From Styela clava (Eukaryota), in NCBI RefSeq assembly GCF_964204865.1, contig NC_135254.1, positions 11,656,001 to 11,720,000 on the forward strand: a DNA stretch of 64,000 bases, read 5' to 3'. Under the pieces are notes generated by a model, which did not search any database, was not told the origin of the DNA, and saw nothing but the letters and a program-made list of their open reading frames with translations. A program made the position numbers and the translations under genes. Shown here one piece after another: positions 8,734-64,000 of the stretch (its first letter is position 1; the number at the start of each line of letters is the position of its first letter).

Positions 8734-11700
8734 ATGTTCAAGTGTTTGTTGTTGTCGGTGTACGTCTGTTTGATTGTTGGAATTTCTGTTAAAGGTAAGT
8801 GGTAGGTTTTTGTATATAATATAGTTTCGATGATTAAATGAAATGTCAAATAATTCATTGTTTTTACCTGGTTATTGCGTATTAAATTGCCCGCAGAAAC
8901 ATGCACGTTTTCTGCATTTCCATTTTTATTTCTTCTGACCTAAGTTATTGCTATTAACATACAAAGCATGCGATGACAAGGACATTGAATGTCCGGACTG
9001 GAAGATATTTTGTGGAGACAACGAGTTTGTGGACAAAACTTGCAAAAGAACTTGTGGAAACTGCCCAACCACAACAACAACAGGTGGCTGTGAGTTTTGA
9101 ATTGGAATATTTTAGTTAATTCTTTGTTACTTTGTTCCCGTTTTATAACATTTTTGTTTAGTTCTGAAATTAGGATTTAAATGATACTGAAAGTATTTTA
9201 GTATTTCATTATAAAATTCGGACAGTTTTCGTAAAATAACTTGGACCATTGTCAAACGCGCCAACGCTGATACGTTTTCGGTATTGCCCAACGAAGTTAA
9301 ATTCATTTCTAAATTCAAACCAGCTGTCTATATGGCATCTTTCACGAACGGCACGAATGGCGATCGGAACTTTATATCCATGCTCTCTCAACCAAATCGT
9401 ATTACTTTTGCTTAGCATGTGTTGACAAAGTCCATGGATGTCCCGACTGGAAATTTTTTTGCGGAAGCAGTAACGTTTACGTCGACACTAATTGTAAAAA
9501 GACATGCGATGCCTGCCCAACAACTGGAGAAGGTGGTGGGGGAGGCGGAGGGGGAAGTGGAAGTAACAGTGAGTATTGTCATCTGAAAAATTATTAAAAA
9601 ATTGTAAAAAGTTTTATATTACATTTGAATATTGAGTAATATTTATTTGCAAATTGATACAGTAAAATCTATTTCAATTTTCAACTTTTGAAAAGCTGTT
9701 GTGTGTTCTGCTTCGCTGCAAATATATAAAAAAATATATAAATGTTTTGATGCAGCGTGGTCTTCATGCTCAAAAACATGCGGTATGGGAACGAGGTTTA
9801 AAGAGACGTGTCAAAGCGGCAGTTGTTCAAAAGAATGGGAAGCATGCGAGATACAAGACTGCCCAGAAGCATGTAAGTACCATCACAAATACGATTCATG
9901 GCTGATTCCGAAATATATATCCACCAATTTTACGTACCCACTCTAAATTTAATATAATTGCTAATAGCTTGCGGGAATAATAAAAGAAAACGAAATGGAA
10001 TGCCGCATGCCTGTTGCACTATAGATTCATATTCATCTGAGTGTGGAAAACAATTCATCAACACACAAAGAGTGGTAAAAGGAGATCCTGCAATATTCAA
10101 AAAATATCCTTGGATTGTAATTATTTTTATTTGTTGTTGTTTTCTATATTATGCTTTTCTGTTCCTATACTTGCCATTAGTCACCGACGACCAACTAAGC
10201 TCTTTAAGCTAAAACAAAATCTATAAAGAACCGGATGAATATATTCATTTCGGAAGACAAATTTGAATCTGTCCGAGTTTTCACCCTACCCTACCAGTTG
10301 GTCTGGTGCCATTTTACATGGGTTATTTTTTTGTCAACCATTAGGCCCTAAAGCTTTACTCATGGCTTTTTAATAGCGTATGATAGAGCTCCATTCAGCA
10401 ATATATGTAAAACGCACTCCTCTAAAAAAATTTTTTTTTACGTTAAAATTCCAAAACGTCTATTGAACTTGCGAGATTTAGAGATTCTAGTAGAGGGTTA
10501 ATAATTATTCCTAACTAATTAATTTTTATTTCAACGTTTTCTTGTGTTATTTTTCAACAGAACAACGCCAAAACCACTATTATAGCAAGAATGGTTACAA
10601 GAATTCACGATTGTATTTACAGAATTTTCGTGTTCAAGGCTTCAATTAACAATTTTGATGACGTCACACCTCTAATTATTACTACACACGCCCCCCTCAA
10701 TGCAAAAAATGTTACTTTTTCCGACGGAAATGCGCGTAGAGAAACGTGAACATTCTAATGCGCGCCGTCAAGCGTGAAAATTACCATTAATTTTACGTTT
10801 TTTTCACGTTTAAAAAATCTCGATACCTCTGCCAAGTATGGTGCAGTCGAAATCATATTTGTCAAAACAGCGCAGCGCCAGGGATGATATGTATGACTGA
10901 AAATACATGCTAAACCAATAACGAGAATATCGGTCAGAGACCGGAGACCTATCGATCGAAAGTTAGGGGATCCCCCAAAACAGCGCTCTTACTCCATAGT
11001 GACACCTTGTGTTCCATCACTAATTAATTAATACCTCGCTAATTATACGACATAATTCATCCAAAATCAATAGTCTTCTGGTCCGACATATGATGAATGC
11101 ACATGCAAAATTTGGAGCAGATTCAATCTCGCTTTCGTGAGATATCGCGTGCATCTAACAGACAAAGAGACAAATACCTATCAACATACTTACCGATTAA
11201 AATCGATAAGTAATAAGTCATTATAAAGAAGAAGTTAATGTTAGTGATTTCCTGTCTGAGTCGCGTCAACAATCTCACACATCTGACTGGCGATTTTGAA
11301 ATCGATGCTATTATTTATACGATTCGCACTTTGCGTCACGGCTGGAGTATCTTTTTCGTGAAATATACGACTCTACTATAGAACATTGACTGTAAAACCA
11401 TTAATACCTTTTAGTATATACCATCCGGCTGTATTGGGCCAATATGACCGGATAAGCAGTACGTTGGTAGCGAAATCCACAGAATTAATTCGGCATAACT
11501 TGTTTCCTCATGTAAATAATTCAACTATAGACCTTCAGTATTCTGGTATTTTTGCATACCCACTTATTAGACACGAAATGTACATATAGATCGTTTTGTT
11601 ATTAATACAATATTGTTGTTCTTGTTTTTCGAATTCTCTTTTCTGAAAAAATCGCTTTCCTTAATTACTGGACTAATTGATTTGCAATATTCAGGGGTTA

Positions 11701-14085
11701 AAGATTGCATTTTTTGTTAGAATTAATTTTATTTCTTTCAAAAATTTCTGTGGGCTCTATGGGATTCGTTTTTGTGTGTGCTATGATGACAAGAAAATTT
11801 AAGCACCTTGTGGCGGTTCCACAATCGCGTTAGTTGTAAACACTGTTGTACCGATGCTACTGTGACAGATCGTATGCAGATGTAAGATATTGCTCCTGTT
11901 ACGATTACTAAATGTCAATTTGTAATTTGTATGTTATTTTTTTTAACTTATAGTTATGATTTATTCTATAAAGGTGGCAATCAAAGCAACTGGAGCATTT
12001 ATTTCAAGCGAGCATTACTGCGCTGGATCCTTAGTGTCTATGAAGCACGTTGTTACAGCAGCCCATTGTCTTGCGTGAGTATTCACTATAGATATATATG
12101 TTTACTTGTTTGTATGGGAAGCAATTTCTTCTATGGTGCGCGATGGCAATGCCCAACTAGTGTGATTTTGTAGGAATAATATTATAATAAATTTCAAGAA
12201 CGCTTCATCAAAGCGAAGCAGTAAACTTTCGACTTTTGCATAGCCAGAGAGTAACACGAACAAGTTTAAAGACCGCTACAAATAATATGTATTAATTTTC
12301 AAAAGACAAAATTTAGAAGTGGAAAAAGAATCCCATAGAGCCCACAATTTTTTTTTTAAATTAATAAAAGTAACAGCCTTCTATCGCAAAGTACGATCTT
12401 TGGAATCTGATAAATTCAAACCAAATTATCCAGTAGTTGATGAAAAAAGAATTTTTTTATACGGTAACAACAAGGAGAAAATATCAACAAGAACAACAAC
12501 ATAATAACAAAACGATCCATAGGTTCATTTCGTGTCCAATAAATGCAAATGTACAGTGGCTATGAAAGTCAGAATATGAATATTAAGTGGAAAACACTGA
12601 TGAAACAATCATGAAACAATAATTTTATTTTACAGAAATCCGGAGACCGGAATAGCGTATCCGTTAAATTCGTTTGTGCTCAGTTTTGGACTCCTACGAC
12701 TAAATGATTCTCCAATGGCCATCAGAACGGTGAAACGAGTTCATTTCAGGCCACTAACAACAAATAATATTAACGGCAAAGTATTCGACTATCCTCGTGA
12801 TGATATAGCCGTTATTGAGGTAAGTGAATATCAATTGAATAGTATTCTATTTCCATTTGGAGCGCAAACGAGTAATAGTTATAACCTGGCCTAAAATTAT
12901 AACTTAAAAGTTATATACGGTATATATATTACTACTGTTTGATTAATCTAGGTAGACAAGATGATGCTGAATAGGATATCTTGATATTTTCTTTGAGCCC
13001 GTGCTACTAACATGAGGGGTTCAGGTTTCAAGACTTCATTTATCTTAAGTCACCTGTAAATCATAATTTATTTTTTGCTTCGTACAGCTTTCGCAATCGG
13101 TGACAAAATCCTCCAGTATTTATCCCATCTGTCTTCCGCACGGGGAAATCACTCCCAAAGATACAACAGGATTTGTTGCAGGCTGGGGAATAGGTAATAT
13201 GTCTATGATTGTGATAATTATTTGCTTTAACAATGTTAAAAACACTACACATTTCCTGGGAATTGATTGTTAGTGGTATCGCACAGACTTGGCAAAATTT
13301 GGTAGATTTGGGGCGGTGTCTGGAATCATTAGTTTCACATCACACACATGTAATGCTCTATGGCTATGTCAACCGGATTCTGCTCCCCTGCTGCTTTTTA
13401 ATAAATCAAGTATGTCGTGTCTCCTGCTTTATGCGTTCTATAAACTATTTTCAGATTCGGCGAATGGAATACTCAGCCTAACTCATTTACAGGAAGCGGC
13501 TGTTCAAAATTTGGATGTTGACATTTGTCGTGCTGGTTATGCAAAATATAGCTCATTAATGCCTAATGAAGCCAGTTTTTCGAAAACCAGTAAGGATATA
13601 TTGTGTGCGGGAAGCATTCATGAAATAGTAAATACCTGTCGGGTAAGAATCTAACATCAAATTTAGACGAAAACATAAAATAACGGAACAAAATGATCTG
13701 TCATAAATATTTCACCCTTAAGAGGATCCATTCCAAAGTAATGGAAATTCACACTTCATTTATTGCCAAGTAACGTGTAATTTAGCATGGTTCATGATAA
13801 TACTTGCCTGATCCTGATCGTCCTAACAGTTGCTATTGTCCCATCATTTTTCTTCTTTCTTAAATTATGTATAATTTTCAGGGTGACAGTGGCGGACCTT
13901 TGGTGTTCCAAAGATGTGAAAGCTGTAGTTGGTATTTGGCTGGAATTGTGTCTTTTGGTCATCCAGATTGCACAAAAAAAATACCCGGCGCTTACACAAA
14001 AGTTTTGAACTACGAGGATTGGATAAGAGGAATTATTAAGGAAGAACCTGATAGTTTTTATTGTTCTAGAAATGTCGGGCCTTAA
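8734..14085 (+). CDS. Gene A: secreted modular S1 serine protease, SP-ShKT-ShKT-TSP1-protease (~461 aa, 10 coding exons)
   Basis: Exons 8734-8794, 8967-9089, 9416-9568, 9756-9872, 9968-10116, 11974-12074, 12636-12819, 13088-13193, 13455-13642, 13882-14085; all GT-AG, 1386 nt, in frame. ShKT C-x6-C..W..C..CKxTCxxC; TSP1 WSSCSKTCGMGTR; activation site QR|VVKG; TAAHC, DIAVI, NTCR-GDSGGP. AATAAA at 14189. Confidence 0.92.
10270..11445. mobile_element. ~1.2-kb repeat-like insertion in gene A intron 5, absent from the matching intron of gene B
   Basis: A and B introns align up to ...AAATTTGAA and resume at CGGATAAGCAGTA. The intervening block has no coding signature and its family was not determined. 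Confidence 0.6.
11564..11775 (+). repeat. Dispersed repeat, left arm of an inverted pair flanking gene A exon 6
   Basis: TTATTAGACACGAAATGTACATATAGATCGTTTTG...TTAATTACTGGA...GTGGGCTCTATGGGATTC. The same family occurs at ~17450-17830, 22350, 38465-38635 (reverse) and ~41655-41900. Confidence 0.75.
12322..12543 (-). repeat. Dispersed repeat, right (inverted) arm flanking gene A exon 6
   Basis: GAATCCCATAGAGCCCACA...AACGATCCATAGGTTCATTTCGTGTCCAATAA is the diverged reverse complement of 11564-11775. Confidence 0.75.
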
Positions 14086-23200: not shown

Positions 23201-25282
23201 CATAGAGCCCACTAAAAGTTTTGATATAAGTAATAACCTTTTAGCAAAAAATACAATCTTCAAAAACTGAAAATTTCAAACCAAATGATTAGGTAGAAAA
23301 GCAATTTTTTTAAACGGTAACAACAAGAAGAAAAATACAAAGAAGAACAACAATATAATAACAAAACGATCCAAGGGTCAATTTCGTGTCTAATACATGC
23401 AAATGTACAGTGGCTATAAACGTCAGAATACGAATATAAGGTGGAAAACGCTGATATTATTATACAATAATATAACTTCACAGAAATCCGGAGACCGGAA
23501 TAGCATATCCTTTAAATTCGTTTGTGCTGAGTTTTGGACTCCTACGACTAAATGATTCTCCAATGGCTACCAGAACGGTAAAGAAGGTTTATTTCAGGCC
23601 ACTAACAACAAATAATAATAATGGCAAAGTATTCGACTATCCTCGTGATGATATAGCCGTTATAGAGGTAAGTAAATATCAGTTGCATAGTCTTCCATTT
23701 CAATTTGAAGCCAAATATAGTAAAAGGTAAACCCTGACACATATATATAACTGTTTGGGAAATCTATAGACAAGATAATGCTAAATTGGATATTGTGATA
23801 TTACCTTCAAGCCGAAAGTTTAATAATTTCCATCTTTCTAATTATATGTTTGATTTTCCAAATTGCCTCTGTAACCAATTTTTGTTGTTGTTTGTTTGTC
23901 TTTTGCTCTCCTGGTAATTTGTGAACATTTCTTCAAATATGCCTTTTCTGTAATATTTTTTCTCTATTTGTCTTCCTTTTATCTATTTTATTATATATAT
24001 TTGCAAAGTTGCCTTTGCTTGGAAGTTTCTCAATAATTTATGAGTTATAGTCAATGTTTGCAACGAATGCAGTTTTTTACACTAAACCAGTAACAGCGCT
24101 ATAGGTGTCGACGTTTGAAGGCCTAACGAGGTCCCTCGCGACTCATTTCGCACAACTGACGTTATTTGTATATTTATTTTCTGTACTAATTTTTGTGCAT
24201 TTGTTCTTGTGACAACAAAAAAAAAAGACAGACTGACAGGCCTGTGCTAGTAACATAGTCGTTTCAGGTTTCAAAACTTCATTTATTCTAAGCCACCATA
24301 ATTTATTTCATAATTCAAATCATAATTTTTTTATTTTTTCATACAGCTTTCGCAACCGCTGAGAACATCCTCCAATATTTATCCCATCTGTCTTCCGCAT
24401 GGGGAAATCACTCCTAAAGATACAACAGGATTTGTTGCAGGCTGGGGAATAAGTAATATGTCTATGATTGTGATACTTATTTGTTTTAACAATGTTAAAA
24501 ACACCACCCATTTCATGGGAATTGATCGTTCGTGGTATCGCACAGACTTGGCAAATGTTGGTTGATTTGGGTCGGTATCTGGAATCATTAATTTCACGTC
24601 ACCCACATGTAATGCTCCCTGCTGCTTCTTAATAAATCAAGTATATCGTTTCTCCTGCTTTATGCGTCGTATAAACTATTTTCAGATTCGGCGAATGGAA
24701 TGCTCAGCCTAACTCATTTACAGGAAGCTGCTGTTCAAAATTTGGATGTTGACATTTGTCGTGCTGGTTATGCAAAATATAGCTCATCAATGCCTAATGA
24801 AGCCAGTTTTGCGAAAACCAGTAATGATATATTGTGTGCGGGAAGCATCCATAAAATAGTAAATACTTGTCGGGTAAGAATCCAACATAAATTAAGACGA
24901 AAACATAAAATATTGAATCAATATTGCCTGTCATAAATATTTTATCTTCAACAGTAACAATAATGTAACGTGAAAATCAGCACGGTTCGTCCTAATAGTT
25001 GTTATTCAATAGTTAATCAATAGTTCAATAGTTGTCCATCATTTTTATTTTTTTTTCGAATATATATATAATTTTCAGGGTGACAGTGGCGGACCTTTGA
25101 TGTTCCAAAGATGTCAAAACTGTGGTTGGTATTTGGCTGGAATTGTGTCATTTGGTCTTCCGGATTGCACAAAAAAAGTACCCGGCGCTTACACAAAAGT
25201 TCTGAACTACGAGGATTGGATAAGAGGAATTATTAAGGAACAACCTGATAGTTTTTATTGTTCTAGAAATGTCGGACCTTAA
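20205..25282 (+). CDS. Gene B: secreted modular S1 serine protease, SP-ShKT-ShKT-TSP1-protease (~459 aa), closest paralog of gene A
   Basis: Exons 20205-20265, 20444-20554, 21380-21535, 21722-21838, 21934-22085, 22829-22929, 23484-23667, 24347-24452, 24686-24873, 25079-25282; 1380 nt, in frame. QR|VVEG, TAAHC, DIAVI, NTCR-GDSGGP. ATTAAA at ~25373. Confidence 0.92.
22350..23395. repeat. Inverted pair of dispersed repeats (22350-22590 and 23188-23395) flanking gene B exon 6
   Basis: TTATTGGACACAAAATGTACATATAGATCGTTTT versus AAAACGATCCAAGGGTCAATTTCGTGTCTAATA; same arrangement as in gene A. Confidence 0.7.
23815..24240 (+). mobile_element. ~430-bp insertion in gene B intron 7, possibly the 3' tail of a non-LTR retroelement
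   Basis: Absent from gene A intron 7, whose flanks align across it. It ends in a poly(A) run followed by GACAGACTGACA. Confidence 0.45.
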
Positions 25283-43200: not shown

Positions 43201-44596
43201 GATTCCGAATCGATTTTAATCAGCGTTCATTCAGAGATGACTGAGATCAATGACATTTTATAACTTCAATCAAAAAGTGGTATGAAATGATTGATACGCG
43301 ATAATTTTGGCTTCAGCATTAAACAATAAAATACATTCTCTCTGCAGGTGGCCACTCCTGTCAGATTTTCATCTCTCATCCAGCCTATCTGTTTACCAGG
43401 AGGTGAAGTCACTCCGAAAGATACCACATGCTTCATTGCAGGATGGGGAAGTAAGCGCGTTTGTTTAATATTACAGTATATGAATTTCGAAACGTTATTG
43501 CCAAACTAAACCAATGTCTACTTGGACGCTATTTTAAAATATTGAATAAGCACCTTTGCTTCTTGTAAGTCAATTTGAGCGAAAAATATTTGTGCTGTCT
43601 GGCGGATTAATTGAAAGTCTAATATAAGCTCTCGCTGGTGATGCTAGTTCGTAACTCACCAGAGTAATAAGTACCGATAACAAAAGTAGCCTCCCAGAAC
43701 ACGAAATTTCCGTCAACATAAAGGCGGCGTTTATTCGCTGTGACCTTCACCCTACTCAGTGAAACTGCATATTCAATTTTTCTTTTAATATTGCATGCGA
43801 CTATTTAGACTGGTTGAAGGAAAAAACTTTATTATTAACAAGGCCCTTTACTTTAAAGCAAGACAGACTGACCCTTGGAACTTAAGACTCATAGGGGTCT
43901 TGATATTCAATTTTGAACTATCAATATTTTTCAATCCGTTTTCAAATTTGAGTCGTGTTCCAGAATTTGACCGTTTGCTAAGCAAGTGTTATTTCAAGAA
44001 GATGTTAAAATTCTCCAATTACTATTATGCTTTATATACATAAGGCACTGGCACACCAAACAAGGCGTCGTGGCATCTTCAAGAATTGGGAATTCAAAAT
44101 TTTGATGTGAACGTCTGCAAGACAAAATACAAAAACTATCATGATATGAACCAATACATGCCGTTTCTTAACGCTGGTAGAAAGTACCTCTGTGCCGGCA
44201 GTTTACATCGCTCAGCGGGAAGTTGCGAGGTGAGAATTTTAACCCTTAACCATTTGTCTATGGAAAAATTGAATACGAAAATACTAAAAGATAGCTTGAC
44301 TATAAGCTTACCTATATAAGATTGTGTCTTAAAACAAACTTGGGCAATATCTTTTCTGTGAAAAAAACTTTTTTTTTAAATTTCAGGGAGATAGTGGGGG
44401 TCCACTCATGTGTCAGAAGTGTTCGTCTTGCAGATGGTATTTAGCTGGGATTGTCTCTTTCGGCCTCACCGATTGCACAACATGGGGCGTTCCAAGCATA
44501 TACACAAAGGTGACAGATTACGAGATATGGATCCGCACTATTACACAAGAATCAGCAAGTTCCCCTACCTGCAACTATAATGGAGCGATCCCTTAA
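40245..44596 (+). CDS. Gene D: secreted modular S1 serine protease, SP-ShKT-TSP1-protease (~408 aa, 9 coding exons)
   Basis: Exons 40245-40323, 41035-41136, 41490-41618, 42141-42313, 42576-42664, 42926-43082, 43348-43450, 44045-44229, 44387-44596; 1227 nt, in frame. ShKT CTDGQLYC...CDITCNRC; TSP1 WSVCSKPCGIGTR; QR|VTGG; TATHN, DITIV, GSCE-GDSGGP. The start codon could instead be the second Met at 40269. Confidence 0.88.
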
Positions 44597-45373
44597 AAAT
44601 GATATAGTTGTATACTGACATTTCGTAAAATTTTAAGCAGTACTCAGCAGCAATTCAAGATAATATAATTAAAATTTGTTGTAATTTTTTAGGAATTTAG
44701 TTTTATTCAACTAAAAAATAATTCATGTGCTTTGATATATAAAAATTTTGCATGCATTTCTGAAGACGAAATATCAAATTATCGGTATCAGATTCATTAA
44801 CCCCTATTAAAAGCGTTTTGGAAATTTAAAATGAAAGGTAATACAGATTTGTTTATGCAGGAAGAAATAACTAATACTATTTTACCAGTATTGTTTTGTT
44901 ATCTTGTACCACGCATCAGCCGATAATAGATAATGGTCCAATTGAAACACCATGACAGAAAAAAATCACATATATATTGTATAATTCAAAATTTAAATAT
45001 TAAATTGTAATAGTTTGATATCAAAACGGCGAGGACAGTCAGACAAATGTACGGACTTTGACGTATCGGTAGGAAGTCATAGGCATACGACATAGGTCAA
45101 AATATGTGGGGAGCTGTGAAAATTATTATGTGGTCAATACGGAAACTCGTTCAAGAGCAATGATCCATATCAATTATAAGCAAGCAACCTCGAATGCAAT
45201 CAAAATCTATAACTTGATTTAAGGTAGGTAACAGCAAAGTTTCCACATTTCTTTTAATATAAAAAGTGCACAGTTGGTTTCTTATATTCAAATATTTTTA
45301 ATACAAGTAAAATAATATAAATACTTCACAGCATCATAATCTACATATAAGTAATACAATTTAAACTCACGGT

Positions 45374-48300
45374 ATGAATTCAAGCATGAAAAAATTGTTG
45401 CATCTGCATCTCCTATTTTGGGTGAAATTTGGTAAGTAAATATTAAATCATTTTTGTTTAGGATTCATTATATGTTTAATGCAAGAATCAACAATTTAAA
45501 ATGATAAGAAAACGTGCTATGCAATCTAATGATCAACTATAATATATGGTGCTTGGTTAGTTTTATAGATTTTTATCTCTATGGCAATACGTTAAATTAA
45601 AACAAATCTCAAATCAATGTCAGATTATTAGGTAATAATGATCATAAAAATTTCAAAGGATTTTGTCAAGATATCAACCAAGCAAATGCTTTATTTACCT
45701 GTACTGATGGAACGGTTATCTCTAATGAAAAACGGTGCAATGGAAAATACGAATGTGAGGGAAGAGAGGACGAAAAAAATTGTGGTATGACCAATGGACT
45801 TACTTGCATCATTTCTTTTGTTTAAACTATGACGTAAACTGTGAAAATCAATTTTTATCTGCTTCTCGAAGAGTATTTTGAATCTTATATTCAAGCTCAC
45901 TGAAATAAGTTAATAAAAATAATAATCTTCGTCATTTTATAAATCTTCATTCGAGACTTTCAAAAATGTGGGAAAGTGGAAGCTGGGGAAGCACATCATA
46001 GTATGGTTGAAGCGAAGAAATTATCGGGAAGAATTGTTGGAGGCGAAGATTCACCTGATGGTGCGTGGCCTTGGCAAGCTATAATAACGAGATATTCAAG
46101 TAATAAGCGTGGTGGAACGCCGATTGTAAGTATAACGTATAAATTTAATGATTGTTTTCAAAAATTCCGAAACTTTAAAAAAATGTTAAACAACGAAAAA
46201 CCGAAAAAATGAGTTGAACTTGTTATTGTTGCATATTATCCACTCGTGGTAAAATATACTTAGCAGAAGTCGATTTAAGTAGAGTTTACAAATATCAATG
46301 ACATACATTCCATTCATTTTTTACAATACAATATTGTTGAGGGTATGAAAGACCGATCTGACTGATACGCTAACTACTAATCTGCATTCTTACGGGCAAA
46401 AACAGTATAATATACATATTGTTCTTCAATTTTTCAATACTGACGATGCAATTCAGATGTTCAGCAAGTGGTATATTAAAGGCGGCGGATCCTTGATTGG
46501 CAGTAAATGGGTGATGACTGCGGCGCATTTATTTGGAACAGACGACAACTCACAAGTATGGCTTTCAGACTACGCTGTCACGCTAGGTGAGAAAATTATT
46601 AAATGCACGGGTTCATAATTGTCTCAAAAAATTATAAATGCGGCATCAAGGATTTTCTATAACATATCATAGTGAAATTTGAGTAAACATATATATATAT
46701 ATAAATATATATTTCAAAATTCAGGTATGTCTGAGAGACCAAATACCAATATGGGGGTCGCAGATTTTGTTCAGATGTTTGCACTGCAAGATGTGTATAT
46801 CCATCCAAACTATTCGTATGGAGTTCTTGACAACGACATCGCATTGGTAAGCTAGAGATATTTACCGTAAAGTAAAAAAGATTCTTTTGTTGGTTAAATT
46901 AATACTGATCTGGATTACTGTGCCTTGTCTTCCATTTTGGAGTGAATTCTGTTAGATCTTTGTGTACACTTACACTGCAGTAGAGTTTATGCAAAGATTT
47001 TTATGAAAATATTGCATTCTGCTAGTCTCGCAAAATAGAGCATTCAAAACATAAAATCATCACAATCATGCAATATGCTTCATGTGTCATTAAAATCCAA
47101 AATTGATGCTCTATAAAAATATTTTTGGATAACTTTTGTGAACAATATTAGATTTTATTCATTGATCAGATGTACTTGTTTAAAGCGGTCTATATATCAA
47201 TGCTTTGGTAATCCCTAGTAACTGACATATTAGATTGATTAACCAGTTAGAACAGAATTGTATTGAGAGTCAATTGATTTTACTTTTCAACTCTCCCAAA
47301 TCTCCAAGATAGTACATATGCAAACTCCGATTAGCAATCAAAATTACAAAGATAAAAAGCATTATATTATTGATATTTTACAGATAAAGCTTGGAGCTAG
47401 AATAAACTCAGAATCACTAGCGATTAACGAAAGCGATGCAAATGGTGTAACCTTTACGTATCATGTGAGGCCAGTGTGTTTGCCCTGTCGGGATGAAGAC
47501 CCAAACGGTGAATCAAAGGATGAGAGCTGCCAGCCTGAGGATATCAATGGTTTGTCAAGGTTTTATTTGTAGAAATGAATGGACGTGTGTTTGCAAGGTT
47601 AGAAAAATGTGTATTTTCCAATGGCCACAAGTGCACAAAATCTTTTAGTATATATTATTAGAATTTATTTGACATTCTTTTTATGAATGTGTTGTTTCTA
47701 CATTAGAATCTGAACTGCTAGCTGCTGGTGAAAAAGTTATTGTCACTGGATTTGGCAACATCAAAGGAACAGATCTAACACAAAGAAGACAACAATTTCA
47801 AATTCCGGATCGTCTCCAATATGCCGAACTGAAGCTTGTAGATCAGTACACGTAAAAAAAAATTCTAGTTGCAAAATTTCAATTAATATGGTCATGAAAA
47901 GTTATTACAGCCAATTACAAGCCTTCGTACTATCACAAACCAGCGAGCATATTCAATACAATCCCAAGTAGTGAGAAATTAAGATAGTCTATTTGAAATG
48001 TAGAAATATTTTTTACGGCACTTTTTCTGTGTAGTAATAGGTTCTGCACTATAGCTTTAATATATATATTTTATTTCCAAAGATTGAGTTTTTATGTTTC
48101 TGTCACATAGATGCTGGCTAGGAATCCAAAATATAAACAAACTTACCCATGGAAATATCAGATATTCTGACAATTTTATTTGCTGCAACCCCGCGAAGGT
48201 TAAAAAGAGTATCGATGCTTGTCAGGGAGACAGTGGAGGACCTTTGGTTAAAAAGGTGAGCCTGGGATACTCACAATTGATGTAATTTTGAAAATTCGAT

Positions 48301-48755
48301 ATATTAGTACACTGTGGTATTACTTGACTACATGAGAATGCAGCAATTTTTCACAAATTTAACCAAATTAGCAACTTTTTATTTTGATGTTTGATGGGGA
48401 GTATCAATAAATGCACAAATGTATTAGATTTTCTTTCATTCTAAACCCTTCCTACGTTGGTATGCTAGAATAACGAATCTCTCTACGTTATTACGATCGT
48501 AATTATCAAATTGACTAAATAAATTTCAGAGAAAGTTTACTTCCTTAGCCTACTATCTTGAACGAATACAAAGTTAACTGCAAACTTCAAATTTCACGTA
48601 TATATAAATAGGTGACGAACTCTGAAACGAGTCAATATCGTTGGTTTCAAGTTGGAATCGTGAGTTTTGGATACGGATGTGCACTCAACTATCCTGGATA
48701 TTATATTAACGTTGTGAAATATACAGGATGGATAAACACTATCATGGATTCATAG
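45374..48755 (+). CDS. Gene E1: secreted LDLa-containing trypsin-like serine protease (~401 aa, 9 exons)
   Basis: Exons 45374-45431, 45659-45784 (possible alternative acceptor 45632), 45956-46125, 46457-46586, 46725-46846, 47384-47549, 47707-47851, 48111-48255, 48612-48755; 1206 nt, in frame. LDLa-like FTCTDGTVISNEKRCNGKYECEGREDEKNC; GR|IVGG; TAAH, DIAL, DACQGDSGGP. AATAAA at 48886. Confidence 0.9.
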
Positions 48756-50814
48756 GCTGCAATCATAACTACTTGGACTTGAAGTCCGGAGTTTGTTTAA
48801 CTTTGTCATTGATGAATTGCTTCAAACTGATTTGACTATTTTGCAATTTGTAGATAGTATATATATGAAATCATTTGGTTCAATGAATAAACGTCTCATA
48901 TGATAGTTTTAAATATTAAAACAATTTTCAGCGTTTTGTCTTTAATTCTGTGACAATAAGATGATAGTACACATAGTTGAAGATATTAAAAAACGTAATG
49001 TTCAGTATAATCTCATAAAGGGTATTCGAACTCGTAAATCAAATATTAAATTCCATTGAGAGCTTGGTTGTAAGATCTTTGAAATTGAAAAATACATTTA
49101 TTCTCCATGTTTTTGATGATTTACTTACACGGCAATTGAAAATTAAATCATTTTGACAACATATGCCTTCCAAACACTGCAATATATAGTTGATGCATCT
49201 ATAATTTATTTGCAGCGAATATCTAAATTTGACGACGCTATAGATGATACGTCATTGGTTTGATTTAAATTCCAGCTAAACAATACATTATAGAGATTGT
49301 TTTTTAATTTTTTCTCCGACAAAGGACAAGTTAGCAAGGCATATATATATTTTAGGTAGAAAGTCGGTTGATGGCTGTTTATGGGAATGCAGAAGGAACA
49401 TGCTGCAGCGTGAAACAGTTAACGTCGTGAGAAATTTATTTCTGAGTGGTACAGATCAACACAAAGGCATTTGAAGCCAGTTGCGTTATTTTGCAAACTG
49501 TGAAAATTATGTAGGTGCGTGTCGTATAAACATCATCAAAAGTCACGCAGAAGCGTCGAAATAAGGCTTGATTGAGTCAATCTTTTCTCGCTGTAATTGG
49601 CTGATCAGTGTTAGTTCAAGATGCACCATTTCGGGCATACTTTTATTGTTTCCTACCTCATGAACTAGGAAAAAGTGGGGAAGGTTGGGACACTTTTTTC
49701 TTTTGGATTTTGTGAGCTACGTAATTTTCACATTCATTTGAATTTGTGTCTGTAGTATTTACCCCAGCGACTGAAAAATTTCCCAGTGAAACGCACATTA
49801 CCACCAAAAGTATTTCAGATCTTTTTTTAAAAAATTCCCCAAAACAAATTTTCTGTATTGGCAACATAAAACCACTTCGGGGACATTCGTATCTGAAGAT
49901 TTTGCATTGTAGACTTACTTGTTGAATATTTTAGATCCCTATTATTAAATCTGAAATGAAATCATTGTTTTACCGTTGAATTATACCTAATTTTAACCAA
50001 TTGAAAATGAGTTCGAAACTTTCATTATCGACGATGACTGTTCTTTGTTAAAAAGGCCATAAACATCAAATACGGGGTTTGAGTGCTGTTTAAAAAGAAC
50101 AAATAACGATGGTGGGACTTCATCAATCAAACAATTGTTCACTGCCTCCACTAAAACAAAACCAACATATATATATTACCAAGTATAATTTCTAATTCCG
50201 ACCAAAGACAAAATATTTCCTTTTTGAATCTGAATCACTCTGAAAATTTTTTTTGAATCTAGAATATATTTTATATTGGACCATTGGAAGATACTTTATC
50301 ACCACAAGAAGATACTTTAATATCACACAAAACTATATCAAAAACAAAACTATCTATATGCTTCTAAGCACTTAATGGATCAAACACTGTCAAATTGTGC
50401 CCAGTGGAGCAGGTCCCACTGAACCCCGTTTCATTGTTTTCCATAGGAAAAAATATTATCAGACCATTCCACGTAGAGATTAGGAAAACACATCTCCTCG
50501 CCAACGTTATGAATATTTCACAGTGGACTAAAGCTAAAAAAATACCAGACAGTGGTTTGTCCTCATGGAAAGCCTAAAGTAGAAAAATAAAACTGTGATG
50601 GCCAAAACCAATTTCATCTCATTGCTTGCGTCGCTCTGCACGGTCGCTGCCCGTTTGCTGACGCTGTCAGTTATGTTGTAACTTGCCGAAAGGCGGATTC
50701 AAATATCAAACCGCGGACCTGATTCAGGATATAGTATGAGTATGAGAGTTGAATTTTCACTGTTCCCACTTTCCCCTACTGCATTTAATAACAAAGAATA
50801 CCTTAAAATTTTGG

Positions 50815-50918
50815 CGCTCCTGAAGTATGTGCACCAATAGGGCGCACAACCTAAACCCCAACTTGGTACAACTACTATGGTCAGGTTGTGCGCCATCTTG
50901 GTGCACATATTTCTGGAA
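50815..50918. mobile_element. Palindromic MITE, same family as 3665-3778
   Basis: CTCCTGAAGTATGTGCACCAATAGGGCGCACAACCT ... AGGTTGTGCGCCATCTTGGTGCACATATTTCTGGAAG. Confidence 0.7.
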
Positions 50919-51257
50919 GTTGAAGATTTAAATTGATAAAATTCCACATAAAATCTGACTACAGTATTTAAAAACAGCTTGAATAGCCTAAACATAAGCT
51001 TTTACTGATTAAACCTTAACTGTAAACACTGAGCGAATGAACGAAGACGCCGGCTCATTATGGAGTAGTGCAAAAACCCGGATAAAAGGTAAGTGAAGAT
51101 TTTGTTAAATTCACCTTGTTAACTGTCTCAATTCAGTTCCAGCCCCGAAAGATAATTACAATATCTTATTTGCATTATTATTGTACATGATAATAAAAAT
51201 CAGATTTTATTTACAGTTTCATATCAGCATAATAGTCATCTGTACGACAATCACTCT

Positions 51258-54200
51258 TTATTTGTCACAATAATCGAAAAAATCCGGACAGCAATCTCTT
51301 CTGCTCTGGCAAGACAAGTCACATGAGCAAAGTTCCCCACGAGACAAGCATTTTCCGGAACAAGTCATGCCAGAAACTTAAAATAAAATGGGAAGTAATT
51401 AACACAAAAGACATAAAACGAAAAGAACATAAATTTGCGGCAAAATGAGTTGCATAAATGAATGTAAAATCGGGAGATCCCAGCATAAATCATGACTTTT
51501 CAAATTTATTAAATGTATAGACTGTTGTATGTTGGCTAGTTTTAAATTTTATCTATGAAATTAGGATAATAATATTCATTGTTACGTGCCGAAATGTACT
51601 GTTATGTACTGTGGTACATGAATTCATAGACGCAAACCAGATCGACGTAAAACCTACGTTGTAACACATATTACTTAATGAAAAAGTCTCAAATATAAAA
51701 CGAAAGAACAAATAAATCAAAAATAGACTTAAAAATTGGATAAAATGGCGAATAAATTGTATAAGTGAATAATTTTACTAAGAAATATTTTCCCGATACA
51801 CCACCAAGGTCTCATTATAATCTACTCACCACATGCATACTTCCTGTAATCGCTTGACCATACATTTAAACCTTGGCATGTTATCGTTGGTTGCAAACCA
51901 GGACCAAGAACTTGAGTCTCAATTTGGCAAATTATTTCCAGTTCGTGACCAACAGCAAATTCTACACCGTTCAAACTTCCCCCTGCATGACCCCGTACTG
52001 TAACGTTACCATCCAAAATAGCGCTGTTTATCCAACATCCAACCGCTGAAATGAACATTTATAGTAATTCACGTTAAATATTAATATCGGACATTCAATG
52101 GTGGACTTCATGAAATTTTAGCAACAGGTTGTTTTCGTATCGAATTTTGTGTTTGTATTTTGTATTTTTTTTTATCGAACAACAACAGGTTCCATCATTT
52201 CCGAAAAACATGCTGAACAAATAGCAAAACAATATCGGATTCGCTGATTAGCACGACATTCCAAGAATATCCGTGCGAACCTCCTAATTCCCATCAGGGA
52301 TTTTATTCTTAGAACGTTTTGACGCTTGTCGAAACGTTCTGAAAATGTCAAGTATACCGAATGAAACTTCTCATGGACTAGAATAATAAGCTCAAATTCC
52401 AGTCATTCATTATTGTTCTCGTTATGATTATAAGACAATCAATTGTCCCTATTTGTTATTTTTATTATTGTTTTGTTAGCATATTTACAACAAGATATTT
52501 GAAATTATTAAAATTAATTTGAAATTCAATTTTTAATCACACAAATGTGAAAGAAGACAAATTCTATTTAGAGGGGCAGATTAACGCCACAATTCCATTT
52601 ACATAAAGCAGGAGATATAATCAGAATTCAGCCATTAATCGAATTTACGGTATGGTTGAATATCACTATCCTCGATGAAGGTTTATAAATGGCATCAATA
52701 AATAAATTTTTATTCTTTAAATGATGACTATTATTTACTTAACTCACGCTCGCATGAAACTTTCTCATTCCAACTTCCGTCTTCTAAACATTTGATTTGA
52801 TTACTGCCAGAATGTCTGTGATTAGGCGGGCAATTAGGATACAGCGTCTCGTCTGGATAGAAAACTTTTGCCCGACTGTTAAGGATCATGGTTCCGCGTT
52901 CAACAGATGAAGGAATTCCACATACTTGCACTGAAATAATGATAAAAACAAAGCGCCATTTCACATAAAAGATACACAATTAATAGACTTGAGAAGCTTT
53001 AGTTCATTATTTGCTAAAATAATTCTAATATGATTCTCTTTTATTTATTTACGTCCCATATATTTTGTATCCATTAAACGTGCATAGGTCACAGAATTAT
53101 AAAGTACGTTAAAACATTTAAAAATTACAAACAATCATGTCCACCTTCTATATATTATTAAAATCCCAAACATCATTTTTAATAATCATTATTTTTTATA
53201 TTGTCGAAGAACGCTGCGTGTAAAATCCACGCTTTTGCAATAATAAATTTGTCATCGAATTTTTTCGGCAACTTTTTTGTAAACACGTTTGTGATTACAG
53301 GTAAGGGTGAGTTTTAAAAGAATGTAAAAGTAATGGAGGGCGAAAATATTTTTTTACTGTAGTGTACACCGTATTCTGGTGATTTTGAATATTGGAGATT
53401 TTTAATTTTATACTAGAATTTGTAGTTATTTTTTATTTGTAGTATTATTATACATGATATTTTACTGAATCAATCGATACCGCATTTGAAATCATCCACC
53501 GGTGGATTCCAGTTTTCATTTTCCAGACAAACACTCGAATTAATCAGTTTTTGCAAGCTACGAGAAAATGCGTGTTTGGTGTTATTGACGCACGACATCT
53601 GGAGGATATCGCCGACTTCGTAAGAATCTATGGTTTGCCTTGGTGCTATGACTTTTATTCCTTCGGATAAATTTGTTAAAGAAAGTTGACATCCCAAACC
53701 TGAAAAAGTACAAAATTTTATAAAAAATTATTGCTAATTATAAATATAATATGATTTAATTAGAATTTGATTCACATATACAATTCAAATAACCGTTACT
53801 GCCATTACTATAAAACACTTACGTTCACAACGAGGTAGTTCTGACCAATTTTCATTGGCAAGACACGTTATGATATTGCGACCTACAATACGAAATCCTT
53901 GTTGACATCCAACTATCAAACTATCTCCCAAGAGATATAATAGATGTTTTTCAATATCACCTATTGTCATATGGTCTTTGAGTACGGGGTAGTCGCATCT
54001 CACGACGGGTGGGAGTTCCTCTAAAAATAGTTAGTTTCTATGAGAAAGTGAAAAGCTCAATTCTTATAGTTATGAAGTCAATTTTTGTAATAGTTTACCA
54101 TGTAAAATATTTAATCATCTTCATAAATTATGAACACACAATAATAAAGTATACATTATAGTGTTGTACGTTTATTTTATCTTTATGGAACTCTTCATAC

Positions 54201-55094
54201 GCTGGGCTTATCATGGAACCTCAATTACCAATCATACAAACACACCCATCATTATCAAATATTTTGGTATCAGACACTTAAACAACAACAATGAAAAGTC
54301 ACAAAAATGAAAATGCAAGAATACTATTCGCGCGACTTCTGTTAAAGCAGAAAAATGTTGCTCCACACAATCGATTCAAAACTGAGAAATTCACACAGGA
54401 CCCCTATAGGCCGCCGAACACCAATAATTGTTTTGCGAACACTAGGTTTAAGAGAAATCTCGGATAAAGAGCACTAGTATACATGAATATTACCTGTTGC
54501 CATTTCTACGCATCTTGGAAGAGTAGACCAAGTACTGTCTTCCCGGCATATTATGCTAGTGGGGCCAGCTAGTGTATAACCAGGATCACACGATGGTTGA
54601 AAAGTCTCTCCCACATTATACGAAATACGTTCTTCTGTGGATAAATCTCTGAGTTTCATAGAGATGGATATATCTGGATAATCACAACCTGATTGACTCG
54701 GAAGTGCTGTTGTTAATGAAGATAATCGATAGTTTGAATGACTTCCATTCGCTCTGTTATTAGCTTTAGTTCTACAATATAGTTGTAAAGGTTGGATTTG
54801 ATTAGGTTTGCTATTGAATAGGTAGTAACCACTAGAGATAGAACATAATTCCGAGTTAGAAATTACCTCCACAGAAAACATCGTCAAACGTGGGTGTCCA
54901 GAGTCCACCATAATCGCATTCGATAGTTGGTGGATCAAAAGGAATTTCATTTTGGAAAATTTGTTCACCATCTCCACATTCTAGAGTAACTGTATCACCA
55001 ACGTTAAAGGTTTTTAAATACAATGAAATCGGCGAGTATCCGCTAACTGTCACTCCTTCAGGCAGAACATATTGGTCCAATTGACATATATTTC
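51258..55094 (-). CDS. Gene F1: multi-CCP (Sushi) protein with C-terminal somatomedin-B domain; 5'-truncated at the duplication junction
   Basis: Phase-1 exons 55094-54867, 54706-54494, 54020-53823, 53699-53481, 52930-52748 and 52045-51830 each encode one CCP (C..C..C..W..C). The last exon, 51376-51258, reads VSGMTCSGKCLSRGELCSCDLSCQSRRDCCPDFFDYCDK*, the 8-Cys SMB pattern. Minus-strand AATAAA at 51211-51206. No start or signal exon was found before 55428. Confidence 0.85.
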
Positions 55095-63817: not shown

Positions 63818-64000
63818 CTGAAATAATGATAAAAACAAAGCGCCACTTCACATAAAAGATACACAATTAATAGACTTGAGAAGCTTTAGTTCATTATTGG
63901 CTGAAATAATTCTAATATGATTCTCTTTTATTTATTTACGTCCCATATATTTTGTATCCATTAAACGTGCATAGGTCACGGAATTATAAAGTACGTTAAA

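What the first reader, a model, noticed from the sequence alone, without database searches (positions are those of the whole stretch)
8734..55094. Candidate clustered protease cascade: tryptic LDLa protease, four Arg-activated non-tryptic ShKT-TSP1 proteases and a CCP-SMB protein
Seen: genes A-D all have Arg at the zymogen activation site (QR|VVKG, QR|VVEG, QR|IFGG, QR|VTGG), yet residue 189 is Asn (NTCR, NTCR, NSCR) or Gly (GSCE). The adjacent gene E has Asp189 (DACQ) with Gly216/Gly226. Established: Asp189 gives Arg/Lys specificity, so A-D should not self-activate and need a tryptic activator; multi-CCP proteins are typical protease cofactors or regulators in complement. Inference: E may activate A-D and F may regulate or localise the reaction, forming a linked extracellular system (immunity, fertilisation or matrix remodelling). 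Linkage alone does not prove this.
Basis: partly seen in the sequence, partly recalled or inferred. Interest (0 to 1): 0.75.

Follow-up and report, generated by a model that had tools for sequence, protein, structure and literature searches.

The report
Sea-squirt protease gene cluster, cascade unproven
A sea squirt (Styela clava) carries a row of duplicated secreted protease genes that have lost the trypsin-type specificity residue, next to a trypsin-type protease gene that shares transcripts with the last of them; whether they form an activation chain is not shown.

Summary
Genes A-D are intact ShK/TSP1-S1 protease genes of Styela clava. They have Arg at the activation site (QR|VVKG, QR|VVEG, QR|IFGG, QR|VTGG), a complete catalytic triad, and Asn189 (A-C) or Gly189 (D). 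E is an expressed 401-aa LDLa-protease with Asp189/Gly216/Gly226.

- An 11-kb, 98.6% identical tandem duplication gives a second intact E (E'), a last-exon fragment of D, and a second F.
- The "F" in the flagged span has no first exon. It looks like a 5'-cut copy of the 3' end of a larger Sushi/EGF mosaic gene.
- A fifth Asn189 paralogue lies about 16 kb upstream of the window.

Among the 150 best family representatives, 31 of the 34 that carry the family's CQ[RK]CxxCxW loop have Asp189. The three exceptions are this cluster, which nests inside Asp189 relatives. So the Arg/Lys activation site is inherited and the non-tryptic pocket is derived.

New support for a D-E link: both are present in 3 of 3 RNA-like runs. 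One contig and one RefSeq isoform splice D's last exon into E's 5' exons.

The closest analogue is the kallikrein (KLK) locus. Activation of A-D by E and any role for F remain untested.

The parts
8734..14085 (+). Gene A. Signal peptide, ShK, ShK, TSP1, S1 protease. 10 exons: 8734-8794, 8967-9089 (alternative donor 9083), 9416-9568, 9756-9872, 9968-10116, 11974-12074, 12636-12819, 13088-13193, 13455-13642, 13882-14085. Activation site QR|VVKG at 10066-10083; Asn189 in NTCR at 13631-13642.
   Evidence: Pfam on exons. Splice enumeration. Database protein P0178 matches these exons.
20205..25282 (+). Gene B, paralogue of A with the same architecture and the same 10-exon layout. QR|VVEG at 22035-22052; Asn189 at 24862-24873. 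Two RefSeq isoforms differ by the donor used, 20549 or 20555.
   Evidence: P0007 = XP_039270406.2 of Styela clava. Pfam on P0007: Trypsin 3.7e-41, ShK in 2 stretches. A versus B dN/dS is about 0.48.
28494..34939 (+). Gene C. Three ShK exons (about 28494-28653, 29595-29744, 30227-30367), TSP1 (30602-30712), S1 protease. QR|IFGG at 31664-31681; Asn189 in NSCR at 34476-34487; Ala226. The 5' end (signal-peptide exon) was not found.
40245..44897 (+). Gene D. Signal peptide (40245-40325), one Cys-rich ShK-like module (41035-41136, not recognised by Pfam), TSP1, S1 protease. QR|VTGG at 42263-42280; His57 in TATHN with no Cys42/Cys58; Gly189 in GSCE at 44218-44229; Ser226. Stop codon ends at 44596; 3'UTR contig runs to 44897.
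   Evidence: P0154 = XP_039270109.2. Exons. Last intron 44230-44386 seen in 3 of 3 RNA-like runs.
44510..45331 (+). Alternative intron that joins a donor inside D's last exon (AAG|GTGACA, 44509|44510) to E exon 2 (45332). A second acceptor at 45014 inside E exon 1 is used by a RefSeq D isoform.
   Evidence: The 15 loose letters before E exon 2 in the X11 contig (table 7) match 44493-44507 exactly; 0.01 matches expected by chance. Sequence read. The tail of P0155 is encoded at 45014-45061 and 56160-56207.
44906..49233 (+). Gene E. Non-coding exon 1 (44906-45223). CDS 45374-48755, 401 aa: signal peptide, LDLa (exon 45659-45784), S1 protease. Activation site SGR|IVGG at 46027-46044; TAAHL with no Cys42/Cys58; DACQGDSGG at 48214-48240; Gly216/Gly226. 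Coding exons: 45332-45431, 45659-45784, 45956-46125, 46457-46586, 46725-46846, 47384-47549, 47707-47851, 48111-48255, 48612-48755.
   Evidence: GT..AG joints in RNA-like contigs and none in the DNA-like run. Frame check. Pfam LDLa and Trypsin.
51258..55125 (-). F (copy 1): six CCP-type exons (54859-55125, 54477-54701, 53788-54030, 53473-53727, 52734-52979, 51825-52058) and a terminal somatomedin-B exon (51261-51377, followed by a stop). No start codon or signal-peptide exon. Probably a 5'-cut duplicate.
   Evidence: Pfam. Comparison with copy 2 and its upstream exons.
44283..55316 (.). Copy 1 of a tandem duplication. It begins in D's last intron and ends upstream of F's first retained exon. 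A 111-bp junction lies at 55317-55427.
   Evidence: Self-BLAST, 98.6% identity. Extension into L001:1-2208. DNA-like run X1: contig depth 30.3 inside against 15.9 in the flank, and the two copy-specific forms at 49516/49600 have depths 16 and 19.1.
55428..64000 (.). Copy 2, which runs on 2208 bp beyond the window. It holds the D' last-exon fragment (55532-55741, +), E' with an intact 401-aa CDS at 56520-59903 (+), and F' exons (62320-62436 SMB, 62885-63118, 63621-63866, -).
   Evidence: E and E' differ at 4 CDS positions, 3 of them non-synonymous.

Best explanation
**What it is.** This is a lineage-specific tandem array in Styela clava: four genes in the window plus a fifth about 16 kb upstream. 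The genes belong to a tunicate family of secreted mosaic S1 proteases. Each has ShK-like and/or TSP1 modules, then a protease domain with a CQ[RK]CxxCxW loop.

**How the array differs from its family.** The array's ancestor lost the trypsin-defining Asp189. A-C and the upstream copy now have Asn189; D has Gly189. All kept the family's Arg/Lys activation site.

**Inferred mechanism.**
- The proteins are secreted as zymogens.
- A trypsin-type enzyme cuts after Arg15.
- The new Val/Ile16 N-terminus switches the enzyme on.
- The ShK/TSP1 part stays attached through the linker Cys-Cys122 disulfide.
- The active enzymes then cut after non-basic residues (Tyr/Phe/Gln type, as KLK7 and KLK9 do), so they cannot activate themselves.

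**The neighbours.**
- E is an unrelated S1 subtype: it has different intron positions, an LDLa module and Asp189. It lies directly downstream of D and is at least sometimes transcribed with it. It is therefore a reasonable but unproven activator, at least for D.
- The flagged F is a partial copy made by a recent 11-kb tandem duplication. That duplication also made a second intact E. F is probably not a dedicated cofactor.
For: **Identity and gene models**
- Organism and RefSeq models.
- Domain content.
- All four genes are intact with a complete triad.
- A versus B dN/dS is about 0.48, which indicates constraint.

**The non-Asp189 pocket is derived**
- 34 of the 150 best representatives carry the loop signature. 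Of these, 31 have Asp189. The 3 exceptions are B, the upstream copy and D.
- In a quick maximum-likelihood tree of 38 rows, these three form one group (SH-aLRT 86). That group sits inside a starred (95) group with the Asp189 proteins P0020, P0098, P0041 and P0058.

**The subfamily is confined to S. clava**
- All proteins at least 41% identical to B are from S. clava; the next hit is 35% identical.
- Family exons on chromosome C5 occur only at 11,637,075-11,711,732.

**Specificity**
- Asn189 and Gly189 are the residues of the chymotryptic KLK7 and KLK9 (PMC3014083 passages).

**E and the D-E link**
- E model and expression.
- D and E are both present in 3 of 3 RNA-like runs.
- D-to-E splice forms.

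**Duplication and truncated F**
-.
Against: - The tree is a quick search. The key group has support 86 (not starred), and the outgroup rows were long and not monophyletic.
- C's protein was not in the tree, and its 5' end is unknown.
- Specificity is inferred from three pocket residues only. An Asp next to Cys220 is invariant in A-D, and its role is unknown.
- Few styelid proteomes may be in the databases, so "S. clava only" may reflect sampling.
- The close packing and shared transcripts of D and E argue that this adjacency is not purely incidental.
- Expression of A-C and of F was not examined.
- The RNA status of runs X5, X6 and X11 is the tool's guess. It is backed only by GT..AG joints that are absent from the DNA-like run.
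Confidence: 0.7

Rival explanations
1. E (and E') is the physiological activator of pro-A to pro-D. The CCP-SMB protein F binds or localises the reaction. Together they form a dedicated linked extracellular cascade.
For: - A-D have a non-Asp189 pocket with P1 Arg, and E has Asp189/Gly216/Gly226.
- E's first exon starts 310 bp after D's stop codon.
- D and E are co-present in 3 of 3 RNA-like runs, and D-to-E splice forms exist.
- E has no close paralogue elsewhere: 2 matches genome-wide for its exon 7, and the next-best match for exon 4 is at most 53% identical over about 30-40 residues.
- KLK loci are a precedent for clustered cascades (PMC3014083).
Against: - P1 Arg/Lys is ancestral in the family, so it does not point to E.
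- At least 7 Asp189 family members and many other S1 genes (90 exon matches, a lower bound) are alternative activators.
- A-C lie 3-6 kb apart, with no transcript link and no expression data.
- The flagged F has no 5' exon and is a duplicate of part of a larger gene.
- E is not found next to the family's other clusters on other chromosomes.
- No biochemical or cross-species evidence exists.
Confidence: 0.12
2. D and E form a tunicate operon-like or read-through unit for reasons unrelated to protease function, such as compact genome packing. The chimeric D-E RNAs would be by-products, and the proteins act in different processes.
For: - About 20% of Ciona genes sit in operons, operationally defined as same-strand pairs less than 100 bp apart (PMC2760879, abstract and passages).
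- The D and E RNA contigs are 8 nt apart.
- Both chimeric forms would truncate D after ..SIYTK and add 10-15 unrelated residues. They look like by-products.
Against: - No spliced-leader letters were seen on E contigs.
- Contigs cannot show transcript ends.
- E's contig depth is about 11-fold above D's in X5 (74.6-97 against 6.5). That hints at E having its own promoter, although depth from contigs is a poor measure.
Confidence: 0.13
3. A-D keep enough affinity for basic P1 residues, or are otherwise self-activating or non-proteolytic binding proteins, so no upstream activator is needed.
For: - The S1 pocket is open (Gly216, with Gly/Ala/Ser226) and has a polar floor.
- An Asp directly before Cys220 is invariant in A-D.
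- PMC3014083 notes exceptions to the residue-189 rule among KLKs.
Against: - The triad and oxyanion-hole motif GDSGG are intact.
- The same Asp before Cys220 also occurs in Asp189 relatives such as P0020 and P0075, so it is not a compensating change.
- Asn189 and Gly189 enzymes among the KLKs are chymotryptic.
Confidence: 0.05

Closest known systems
Human kallikrein-related peptidase (KLK) locus and its activation cascades
   Same: - A tandem cluster of secreted S1 zymogens activated after Arg/Lys.
- Most members are tryptic (Asp189) and a few are chymotryptic, with exactly the residues seen here: Asn189 (KLK7) and Gly189 (KLK9).
- The chymotryptic members depend on tryptic neighbours (PMC3014083, passages read).
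   Different: - KLKs are single-domain proteases and all are paralogues of one another.
- Here the non-tryptic genes carry ShK/TSP1 modules.
- The tryptic neighbour E belongs to another S1 subtype, with an LDLa module and different intron positions.
- No cross-activation has been shown here.
Tunicate TSP1/ShK-S1 protease family with the CQ[RK]CxxCxW loop (automatic names such as 'brain-specific serine protease 4-like', 'coadhesin-like', 'SCO-spondin-like' in Styela, Ciona and Clavelina)
   Same: - The same protease domain, loop signature and C-terminal Cys.
- The same linker motif (..CC..CG..R|) and the same module types.
- P0020 of S. clava also shows ShK (Pfam) and a TSP1-like stretch (read by eye) before the protease domain.
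-.
   Different: - All 31 other signature-bearing representatives have Asp189.
- This cluster alone has Asn or Gly.
- No paper on the family turned up in four full-text searches.
Complement-type protease systems (MASP, factor I, CCP regulators)
   Same: - E combines an LDLa module with a tryptic protease domain that lacks the Cys42-Cys58 loop disulfide. That loss is a trait I recall for C1r/C1s/MASP-2.
- Sushi/CCP repeats lie nearby.
   Different: - E has only one LDLa module. It has no CUB, EGF, CCP, FIMAC or SRCR modules.
- F ends in a somatomedin-B domain and lacks its 5' part.
- No C3/TEP-type gene is in the window.
- The best PDB matches of B are generic: PPAE-I, prostasin, tryptase, MASP-2 at E about 1e-24 to 1e-27.
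Ciona operons
   Same: A same-strand gene pair whose RNA contigs lie 8 nt apart, under the 100-bp operational limit (PMC2760879).
   Different: - No spliced leader was seen.
- The downstream gene has a 318-nt non-coding first exon.
- Transcript ends cannot be read from contigs.

Membership tests
Peptidase S1 (chymotrypsin fold), catalytically competent | Match to the Trypsin profile, plus His57, Asp102, Ser195 and the GDSGG oxyanion motif. | tested here: met
   - Pfam Trypsin on exons of A and E.
- Pfam Trypsin on P0007 (B) 3.7e-41 and P0154 (D) 1.4e-42.
- Triad residues read in A-E.
Peptidase S1 zymogen activated after a basic residue | Arg/Lys at P1, followed by a hydrophobic residue 16 and the ..G(19) motif, aligned with known activation sites. 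| tested here: met
   - Motifs.
- B's tqR|VVEG aligns with the adK|ILNG site of PPAE-I.
- E has SGR|IVGG.
Trypsin-type specificity | Asp189 with Gly216 and Gly226. | tested here: not met
   - A and B: Asn/Gly/Gly. C: Asn/Gly/Ala. D: Gly/Gly/Ser.
- E meets it: Asp/Gly/Gly.
KLK-like activation cascade | A tryptic member demonstrably cleaves the propeptide of the non-tryptic members. | not testable with these tools
   This needs recombinant proteins. Only co-presence of D and E RNA and shared transcripts were found.
KLK-like activation cascade | Linkage conserved across species. | not tested
The other genome collections hold no tunicates.
ShKT-domain proteins | Match to Pfam ShK (PF01549) above its cut-off. 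| tested here: inconclusive
   - A: 2 of 2 modules met.
- B: met.
- C: 2 of 3 met, the third at 17.8 bits against a cut-off of 20.9.
- D: 0 families, although it keeps a six-Cys pattern and a weak tblastn match (E 6.8e-05) to A's ShK2.
Complement factor I / MASP | Module string FIMAC-SRCR-LDLa-LDLa-SP, or CUB-EGF-CUB-CCP-CCP-SP (architectures recalled). | tested here: not met
   E's nine coding exons give a signal peptide, one LDLa module and the protease domain only.
Tunicate operon | Same-strand genes less than 100 bp apart, with the downstream mRNA carrying a spliced leader. | tested here: inconclusive
   - The gap between RNA contigs is 8 nt (44897 and 44906), but contigs cannot show transcript ends.
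- No leader letters were seen.
Regulators with CCP repeats (a complete secreted CCP-SMB protein) | An open reading frame with a start codon and signal peptide ahead of the CCP modules. | tested here: not met
   - No Met or signal-peptide exon lies between 55125 and the end of the repeat.
- In copy 2, the next upstream exon is a Sushi exon outside the repeat. Its GTAAGT donor is phase-compatible.

The most novel reading that the evidence does not exclude
A non-tryptic protease zymogen (D) and a tryptic LDLa protease able to cut its QR|V site (E) are produced from one read-through or operon-like transcription unit. The tunicate would thereby deliver activator and substrate together, giving a two-step cascade hard-wired at the level of transcription. 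The recent duplication of E would double the activator dose for the whole Asn189/Gly189 array.
Probability: 0.12. Interest if true: 0.6.

Novelty: new variant of a known kind. Interest (0 to 1): 0.36.

Why it matters
If E does activate D (and A-C), this would be a compact invertebrate-chordate counterpart of the kallikrein cascades. It would have been built independently from mosaic ShK/TSP1 proteases.

The locus would also be a clean example of two things:
- how a specificity switch (Asp189 to Asn/Gly) creates dependence on another protease;
- how tunicate read-through or operon transcription could couple the two partners.

As it stands, the locus is mainly a well-resolved case of lineage-specific protease gene expansion with a derived specificity pocket and a very recent segmental duplication. 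It is useful for annotation and for choosing candidates to express, but it is not surprising to a protease specialist.

Tried and rejected
**Leads that went nowhere**
- E and F could not be searched as whole proteins. Only exon-by-exon Pfam and PDB searches were made.
- F expression is unresolved. The single read-laying run covered 44040-50039, which holds no F exon. My rough word arithmetic is this: X5 holds 0.29 of the words of 44040-54039, and D plus E pieces explain about 0.20-0.27. That neither shows nor excludes F.
- Which copy (E or E') is expressed could not be told. RNA variants match copy 2 at 6 of 10 (X5), 3 of 12 (X6) and 1 of 5 (X11) places.
- Other long ORFs of the window gave no Pfam family: 0 of 8 stretches scanned (one of the eight was F's sixth CCP-like exon).
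- Four literature searches found no paper on this family. Supplementary files were not asked for.

**Readings I rejected**
- That D lacks His57 or Asp102. Its exons were missed by a motif scan but found.
- That the 11-kb repeat is a haplotype mis-join. Contig depth is 30.3 against 15.9 in the flank, and both copy-specific forms lie near single-copy depth. X1 may, however, be the assembly's own sample, and the tool warns that depth is not copy number.
- That the upstream paralogue is complete in this assembly. Residues 1-119 of the older model P0179 find no match of 85% or more in the 30 kb upstream.

**Not done**
- Structure prediction and fold search were not run. They would not resolve side-chain specificity.


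Full report
**Where the window comes from.** The window is chromosome piece C5:11,656,001-11,720,000 of the assembly searched as G000. Proteins identical to the window's genes are RefSeq models of the ascidian Styela clava:
- Gene B is XP_039270406.2, named "chymotrypsin-like protease CTRL-1".
- Gene D is XP_039270109.2.
- An older model of gene A is P0178.

The window is 31-37% G+C and has no N.

I built exon models from three sources: stop-to-stop frames, paralogue tblastn, and an enumeration of phase-compatible GT..AG pairs.
- A and B have ten exons each. They encode a signal peptide, ShK, ShK, TSP1, a Cys-containing linker with the activation site, and five protease exons.
- C has three ShK exons. 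Its first exon was not found.
- D has a signal peptide exon at 40245-40325, one Cys-rich module and one TSP1 module.

Pfam gave the following:
- A: ShK, ShK and Trypsin, with TSP1 below the cut-off.
- C: ShK in 2 of 3 exons above the cut-off, plus TSP1.
- D: TSP1, but no ShK match.
- P0007 (B) and P0154 (D) as whole proteins: Trypsin at 3.7e-41 and 1.4e-42.

In A-D an intron lies exactly between residues 192 and 193. The reading N/G189-x-C191-R/E192|G193-D-S195 therefore depends on that splice.
- It is phase 0 with GT..AG in all four genes.
- It is the junction in P0178, P0007 and P0154.
- For D it is seen directly as a joint skipping 157 nt in 3 of 3 RNA-like runs and in 0 of 1 DNA-like run.

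In phmmer alignments to solved structures, B's Asn stands opposite the Asp of the D-x-C-x-GDSGG motif of PPAE-I and prostasin.

Positions 216/226 are Gly/Gly in A and B, Gly/Ala in C and Gly/Ser in D. His57, Asp102 and Ser195 are present in all four. D's His57 and Asp102 exons were missed by my first motif scan and found.

A and B differ with dN/dS of about 0.48. The protease exons are more constrained than that, and the first ShK exon has pN above pS on small counts. The "seen" part of the finding is therefore confirmed.

**Gene E.** One read-laying run was made on 44040-50039 with three RNA-like runs from three studies (X5, X6, X11) and one DNA-like run (X1). It gave GT..AG joints for E that are absent from X1:
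- five joints appear in 3 of 3 RNA-like runs;
- two appear in 2 of 3;
- the exon 1-exon 2 joint appears in 1 of 3.

One further intron (46587-46724) is inferred. It rests on contig length arithmetic (251 nt between mapped pieces) and a GT..AG pair. The tool had skipped a simple repeat there.

The resulting frame is open for 401 codons, from 45374 to 45431 onwards through to 48755.

E encodes:
- a signal peptide;
- one LDLa module (Pfam 1.7e-07);
- a protease domain with SGR|IVGG, TAAHL, DNDIAL, DACQGDSGGP and ..SFGYGCALNYPGYY.. .

That gives Asp189, Gly216 and Gly226. The Asp aligns with the corresponding Asp of thrombin.

E lacks both Cys42 and Cys58, and so does D. E's intron positions differ from those of A-D; for example, there is no intron at 192|193. 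E therefore belongs to a different S1 subtype. It is not a diverged member of the array.

E's exon 7 finds only two places in the genome, E and E'. Its exon 4 finds nothing closer than about 53% identity over about 30 residues.

**The duplication and gene F.** Self-comparison shows that 44283-53113 is repeated at 55428-64000 with 98.6% identity. Fetching the next 10 kb shows that the second copy runs on to L001:2208. There is no third copy within the 30 kb fetched downstream.

The unit starts in D's last intron. Copy 2 therefore holds:
- a lone copy of D's last exon (55532-55741);
- a second E with the same exon lengths, conserved splice sites and an open 401-codon frame (56520-59903). It differs from E at four CDS positions, three of them non-synonymous;
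- a second set of F exons.

Evidence from the DNA-like run X1:
- The contig inside the repeat has depth 30.3, against 15.9 for the unique flank.
- It carries copy-2 letters at 19 of 21 variant places.
- At 49516/49600, where the copies differ by an 83-nt stretch, both forms are present at depths 16 and 19.1.

This fits a real two-copy state. Two cautions apply: the tool warns that contig depth is not copy number, and X1 may be the assembly's own sample.

F lies on the minus strand. It has Sushi matches in five exons (four above the cut-off), one CCP-like exon without a match, and a terminal somatomedin-B exon followed by a stop.

No Met or signal-peptide exon lies upstream of its first exon within the repeat. 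In copy 2, the next upstream minus-strand exon lies outside the repeat.
- It is a Sushi exon (8.2e-09).
- It ends ..GCI A|GTAAGT in phase 1.
- It matches the phase-1 acceptor of the first repeated exon.

Further upstream lie EGF, EGF, Sushi and LDLa exons. After those comes a C-type lectin-EGF-Sushi series.

The flagged F is therefore most simply a 5'-truncated duplicate of the 3' end of a larger mosaic gene. How those upstream exons divide into genes is not known, because I had no RNA data for them.

**Family context.** I searched 1.84 billion representatives with a profile of the last exons of A-D. It found 9403 proteins at E up to 0.001, and the best 150 were listed.

Of those 150, 34 carry the loop signature x-x-C-x-GDSGG..CQ[RK]CxxCxW.
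- 31 have Asp at 189.
- The 3 that do not are B, D and P0009.

Named members come from Styela clava, Ciona intestinalis, C. savignyi and Clavelina lepadiformis. Their automatic names vary widely.

I read the activation sites of 9 Asp189 relatives (P0020, P0041, P0058, P0075, P0079, P0085, P0114, P0131, and P0021 in part). P1 is Arg or Lys wherever the site is present.

I built a quick IQ-TREE of 38 rows: 32 signature rows and 6 outgroup rows. Two fragments, P0046 and P0117, were left out.
- B, P0009 and D group together (SH-aLRT 86).
- That group sits inside a starred group (95) with P0020, P0098, P0041 and P0058, all Asp189.
- The outgroup rows were long and not monophyletic, so the root is only approximate.

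A word search with B found proteins at least 41% identical only in S. clava: A, B, two models of the upstream copy, and D. The next hit is 35% identical and from an insect.

In the genome, family exons on C5 occur only between 11,637,075 and 11,711,732. The other matches lie on other chromosomes.

The upstream copy (L005:1048-4333) has Asn189 and Lys at P1. In this assembly it has no ShK or TSP1 exons within the 30 kb fetched.

Two conclusions follow:
- The basic P1 residue is inherited from tryptic ancestors.
- The Asn/Gly pocket is a derived trait of this one array.

**A transcript link between D and E.** D's stop codon ends at 44596. In X5, a contig covers D's last exon and 3'UTR up to 44897, and E's contig begins at 44906.

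In X11, the E contig carries 15 extra letters ahead of exon 2.
- These letters match 44493-44507 inside D's last exon exactly. They also match the D' fragment. The match count expected by chance is 0.01.
- In the genome they are followed by AG|GTGACA, a usable donor.

Independently, an older RefSeq isoform of D (P0155, XP_039270110.1) ends ..SIYTK FDTKTARTVRQMYGL. That tail is encoded at 45014-45061 inside E's exon 1. Copy 1 differs by one residue, and copy 2 at 56160-56207 is exact.

So transcription from D (or from the D' fragment) sometimes runs into E. Both chimeric forms would truncate D and look like by-products.

Ciona operons are defined operationally as same-strand pairs less than 100 bp apart, and they hold about a fifth of its genes (PMC2760879, abstract and passages). 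No spliced-leader letters were seen here, and contigs cannot show transcript ends. The operon reading is therefore open.

**Most likely mechanism and comparison.** The steps below are textbook S1 mechanism, applied here by inference:
- A-D are secreted zymogens.
- Cleavage after Arg15 frees Val/Ile16, which pairs with Asp194.
- The N-terminal ShK/TSP1 part probably stays disulfide-linked through the ..CG.. linker Cys and Cys122 (PICLP).

The active enzymes should prefer non-basic P1 residues. Among human kallikreins the chymotryptic members have Ser189 (KLK3), Asn189 (KLK7) and Gly189 (KLK9) and prefer Tyr, Phe or Gln. KLK zymogens are activated by autoactivation, by KLK cascades or by other proteases (PMC3014083, passages read).

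This locus differs from it in three ways:
- its proteases are mosaic;
- the tryptic neighbour belongs to a different subtype;
- no cleavage has been shown.

E is a fair candidate activator for D because of the shared transcription. However, at least seven Asp189 members of the same family in S. clava are equally able in principle: P0020, P0032, P0073, P0090, P0114 and P0131, plus P0021 by its sequence. So are many other S1 genes.

**Limits.**
- Expression of A-C and F was not examined.
- The RNA nature of X5, X6 and X11 is the tool's guess. It is supported by spliced joints that the DNA-like run lacks.
- Supplementary files were not consulted.
- The following rest on my recall of the literature and on no call made here: the role of Asp189/Gly216/Gly226, the Ile16-Asp194 switch, the Cys122 interchain bond, the module strings of MASP and factor I, and the absence of the Cys42-Cys58 bond in C1r/C1s/MASP-2.

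Noticed in passing
window 4-1069: A minisatellite with a 72-bp unit, 14.8 copies and 84% matches. The 294-aa minus-strand ORF there is made of the repeat.
   Followed up: partly
window 44283-55316 and 55428-64000 (+ L001:1-2208): A two-copy tandem duplication of about 11 kb at 98.6% identity. It gives a second intact LDLa-protease gene (E', CDS 56520-59903), a lone last exon of D (55532-55741) and a second F. Contig depth in a DNA-like run is double that of the flank.
   Followed up: yes
window 44509|44510 to 45014 or 45332: A donor inside D's last coding exon is spliced to acceptors in E's exon 1 (RefSeq isoform P0155) or at E's exon 2 (contig of run X11). These are read-through D-E transcripts that would truncate D.
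   Followed up: yes
L005:1048-4333 (G000:C5:11637048-11640333), about 16-19 kb upstream of the window: A fifth paralogue (P0009) with Asn189 and Lys at P1 (TQK|VLQG). In this assembly no ShK or TSP1 exons lie within the 30 kb fetched, although an older model (P0179) has them. The current RefSeq model starts with an unrelated 114-aa exon at L004:6034-6375.
   Followed up: partly
L001:2575-5972 and L002:544-8089, minus strand (just beyond the window's end): A long run of mosaic exons: Sushi, EGF, EGF, Sushi, LDLa, then a selectin-like C-type lectin-EGF-Sushi series. How they divide into genes, and whether F' is their 3' end, is unknown.
   Followed up: partly
window 49640-49839: A high-copy repeat. 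Summed contig depth is 907 in the DNA-like run, against about 30 around it.
   Followed up: no
window 1807-3528 / 26101-28082 and 3765-4557 / 16495-17288: Dispersed repeats, 80-84% identical and not colinear with the A/B duplication. They are probably mobile-element remains. ORFs within them gave no Pfam family.
   Followed up: partly
window 42576-42664 (D) and 46457-46586 (E): D and E both lack Cys42 and Cys58 (the histidine-loop disulfide), while A-C keep it, although D and E belong to different S1 subtypes. This may be convergence or chance.
   Followed up: no
window 9416-9568 versus 21380-21535: The older database model of gene A (P0178) carries a second ShK module that is 97% identical to B's exon, not A's. 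This suggests gene conversion, a haplotype difference or an assembly chimera. The ShK modules are joined by poly-Gly linkers.
   Followed up: no
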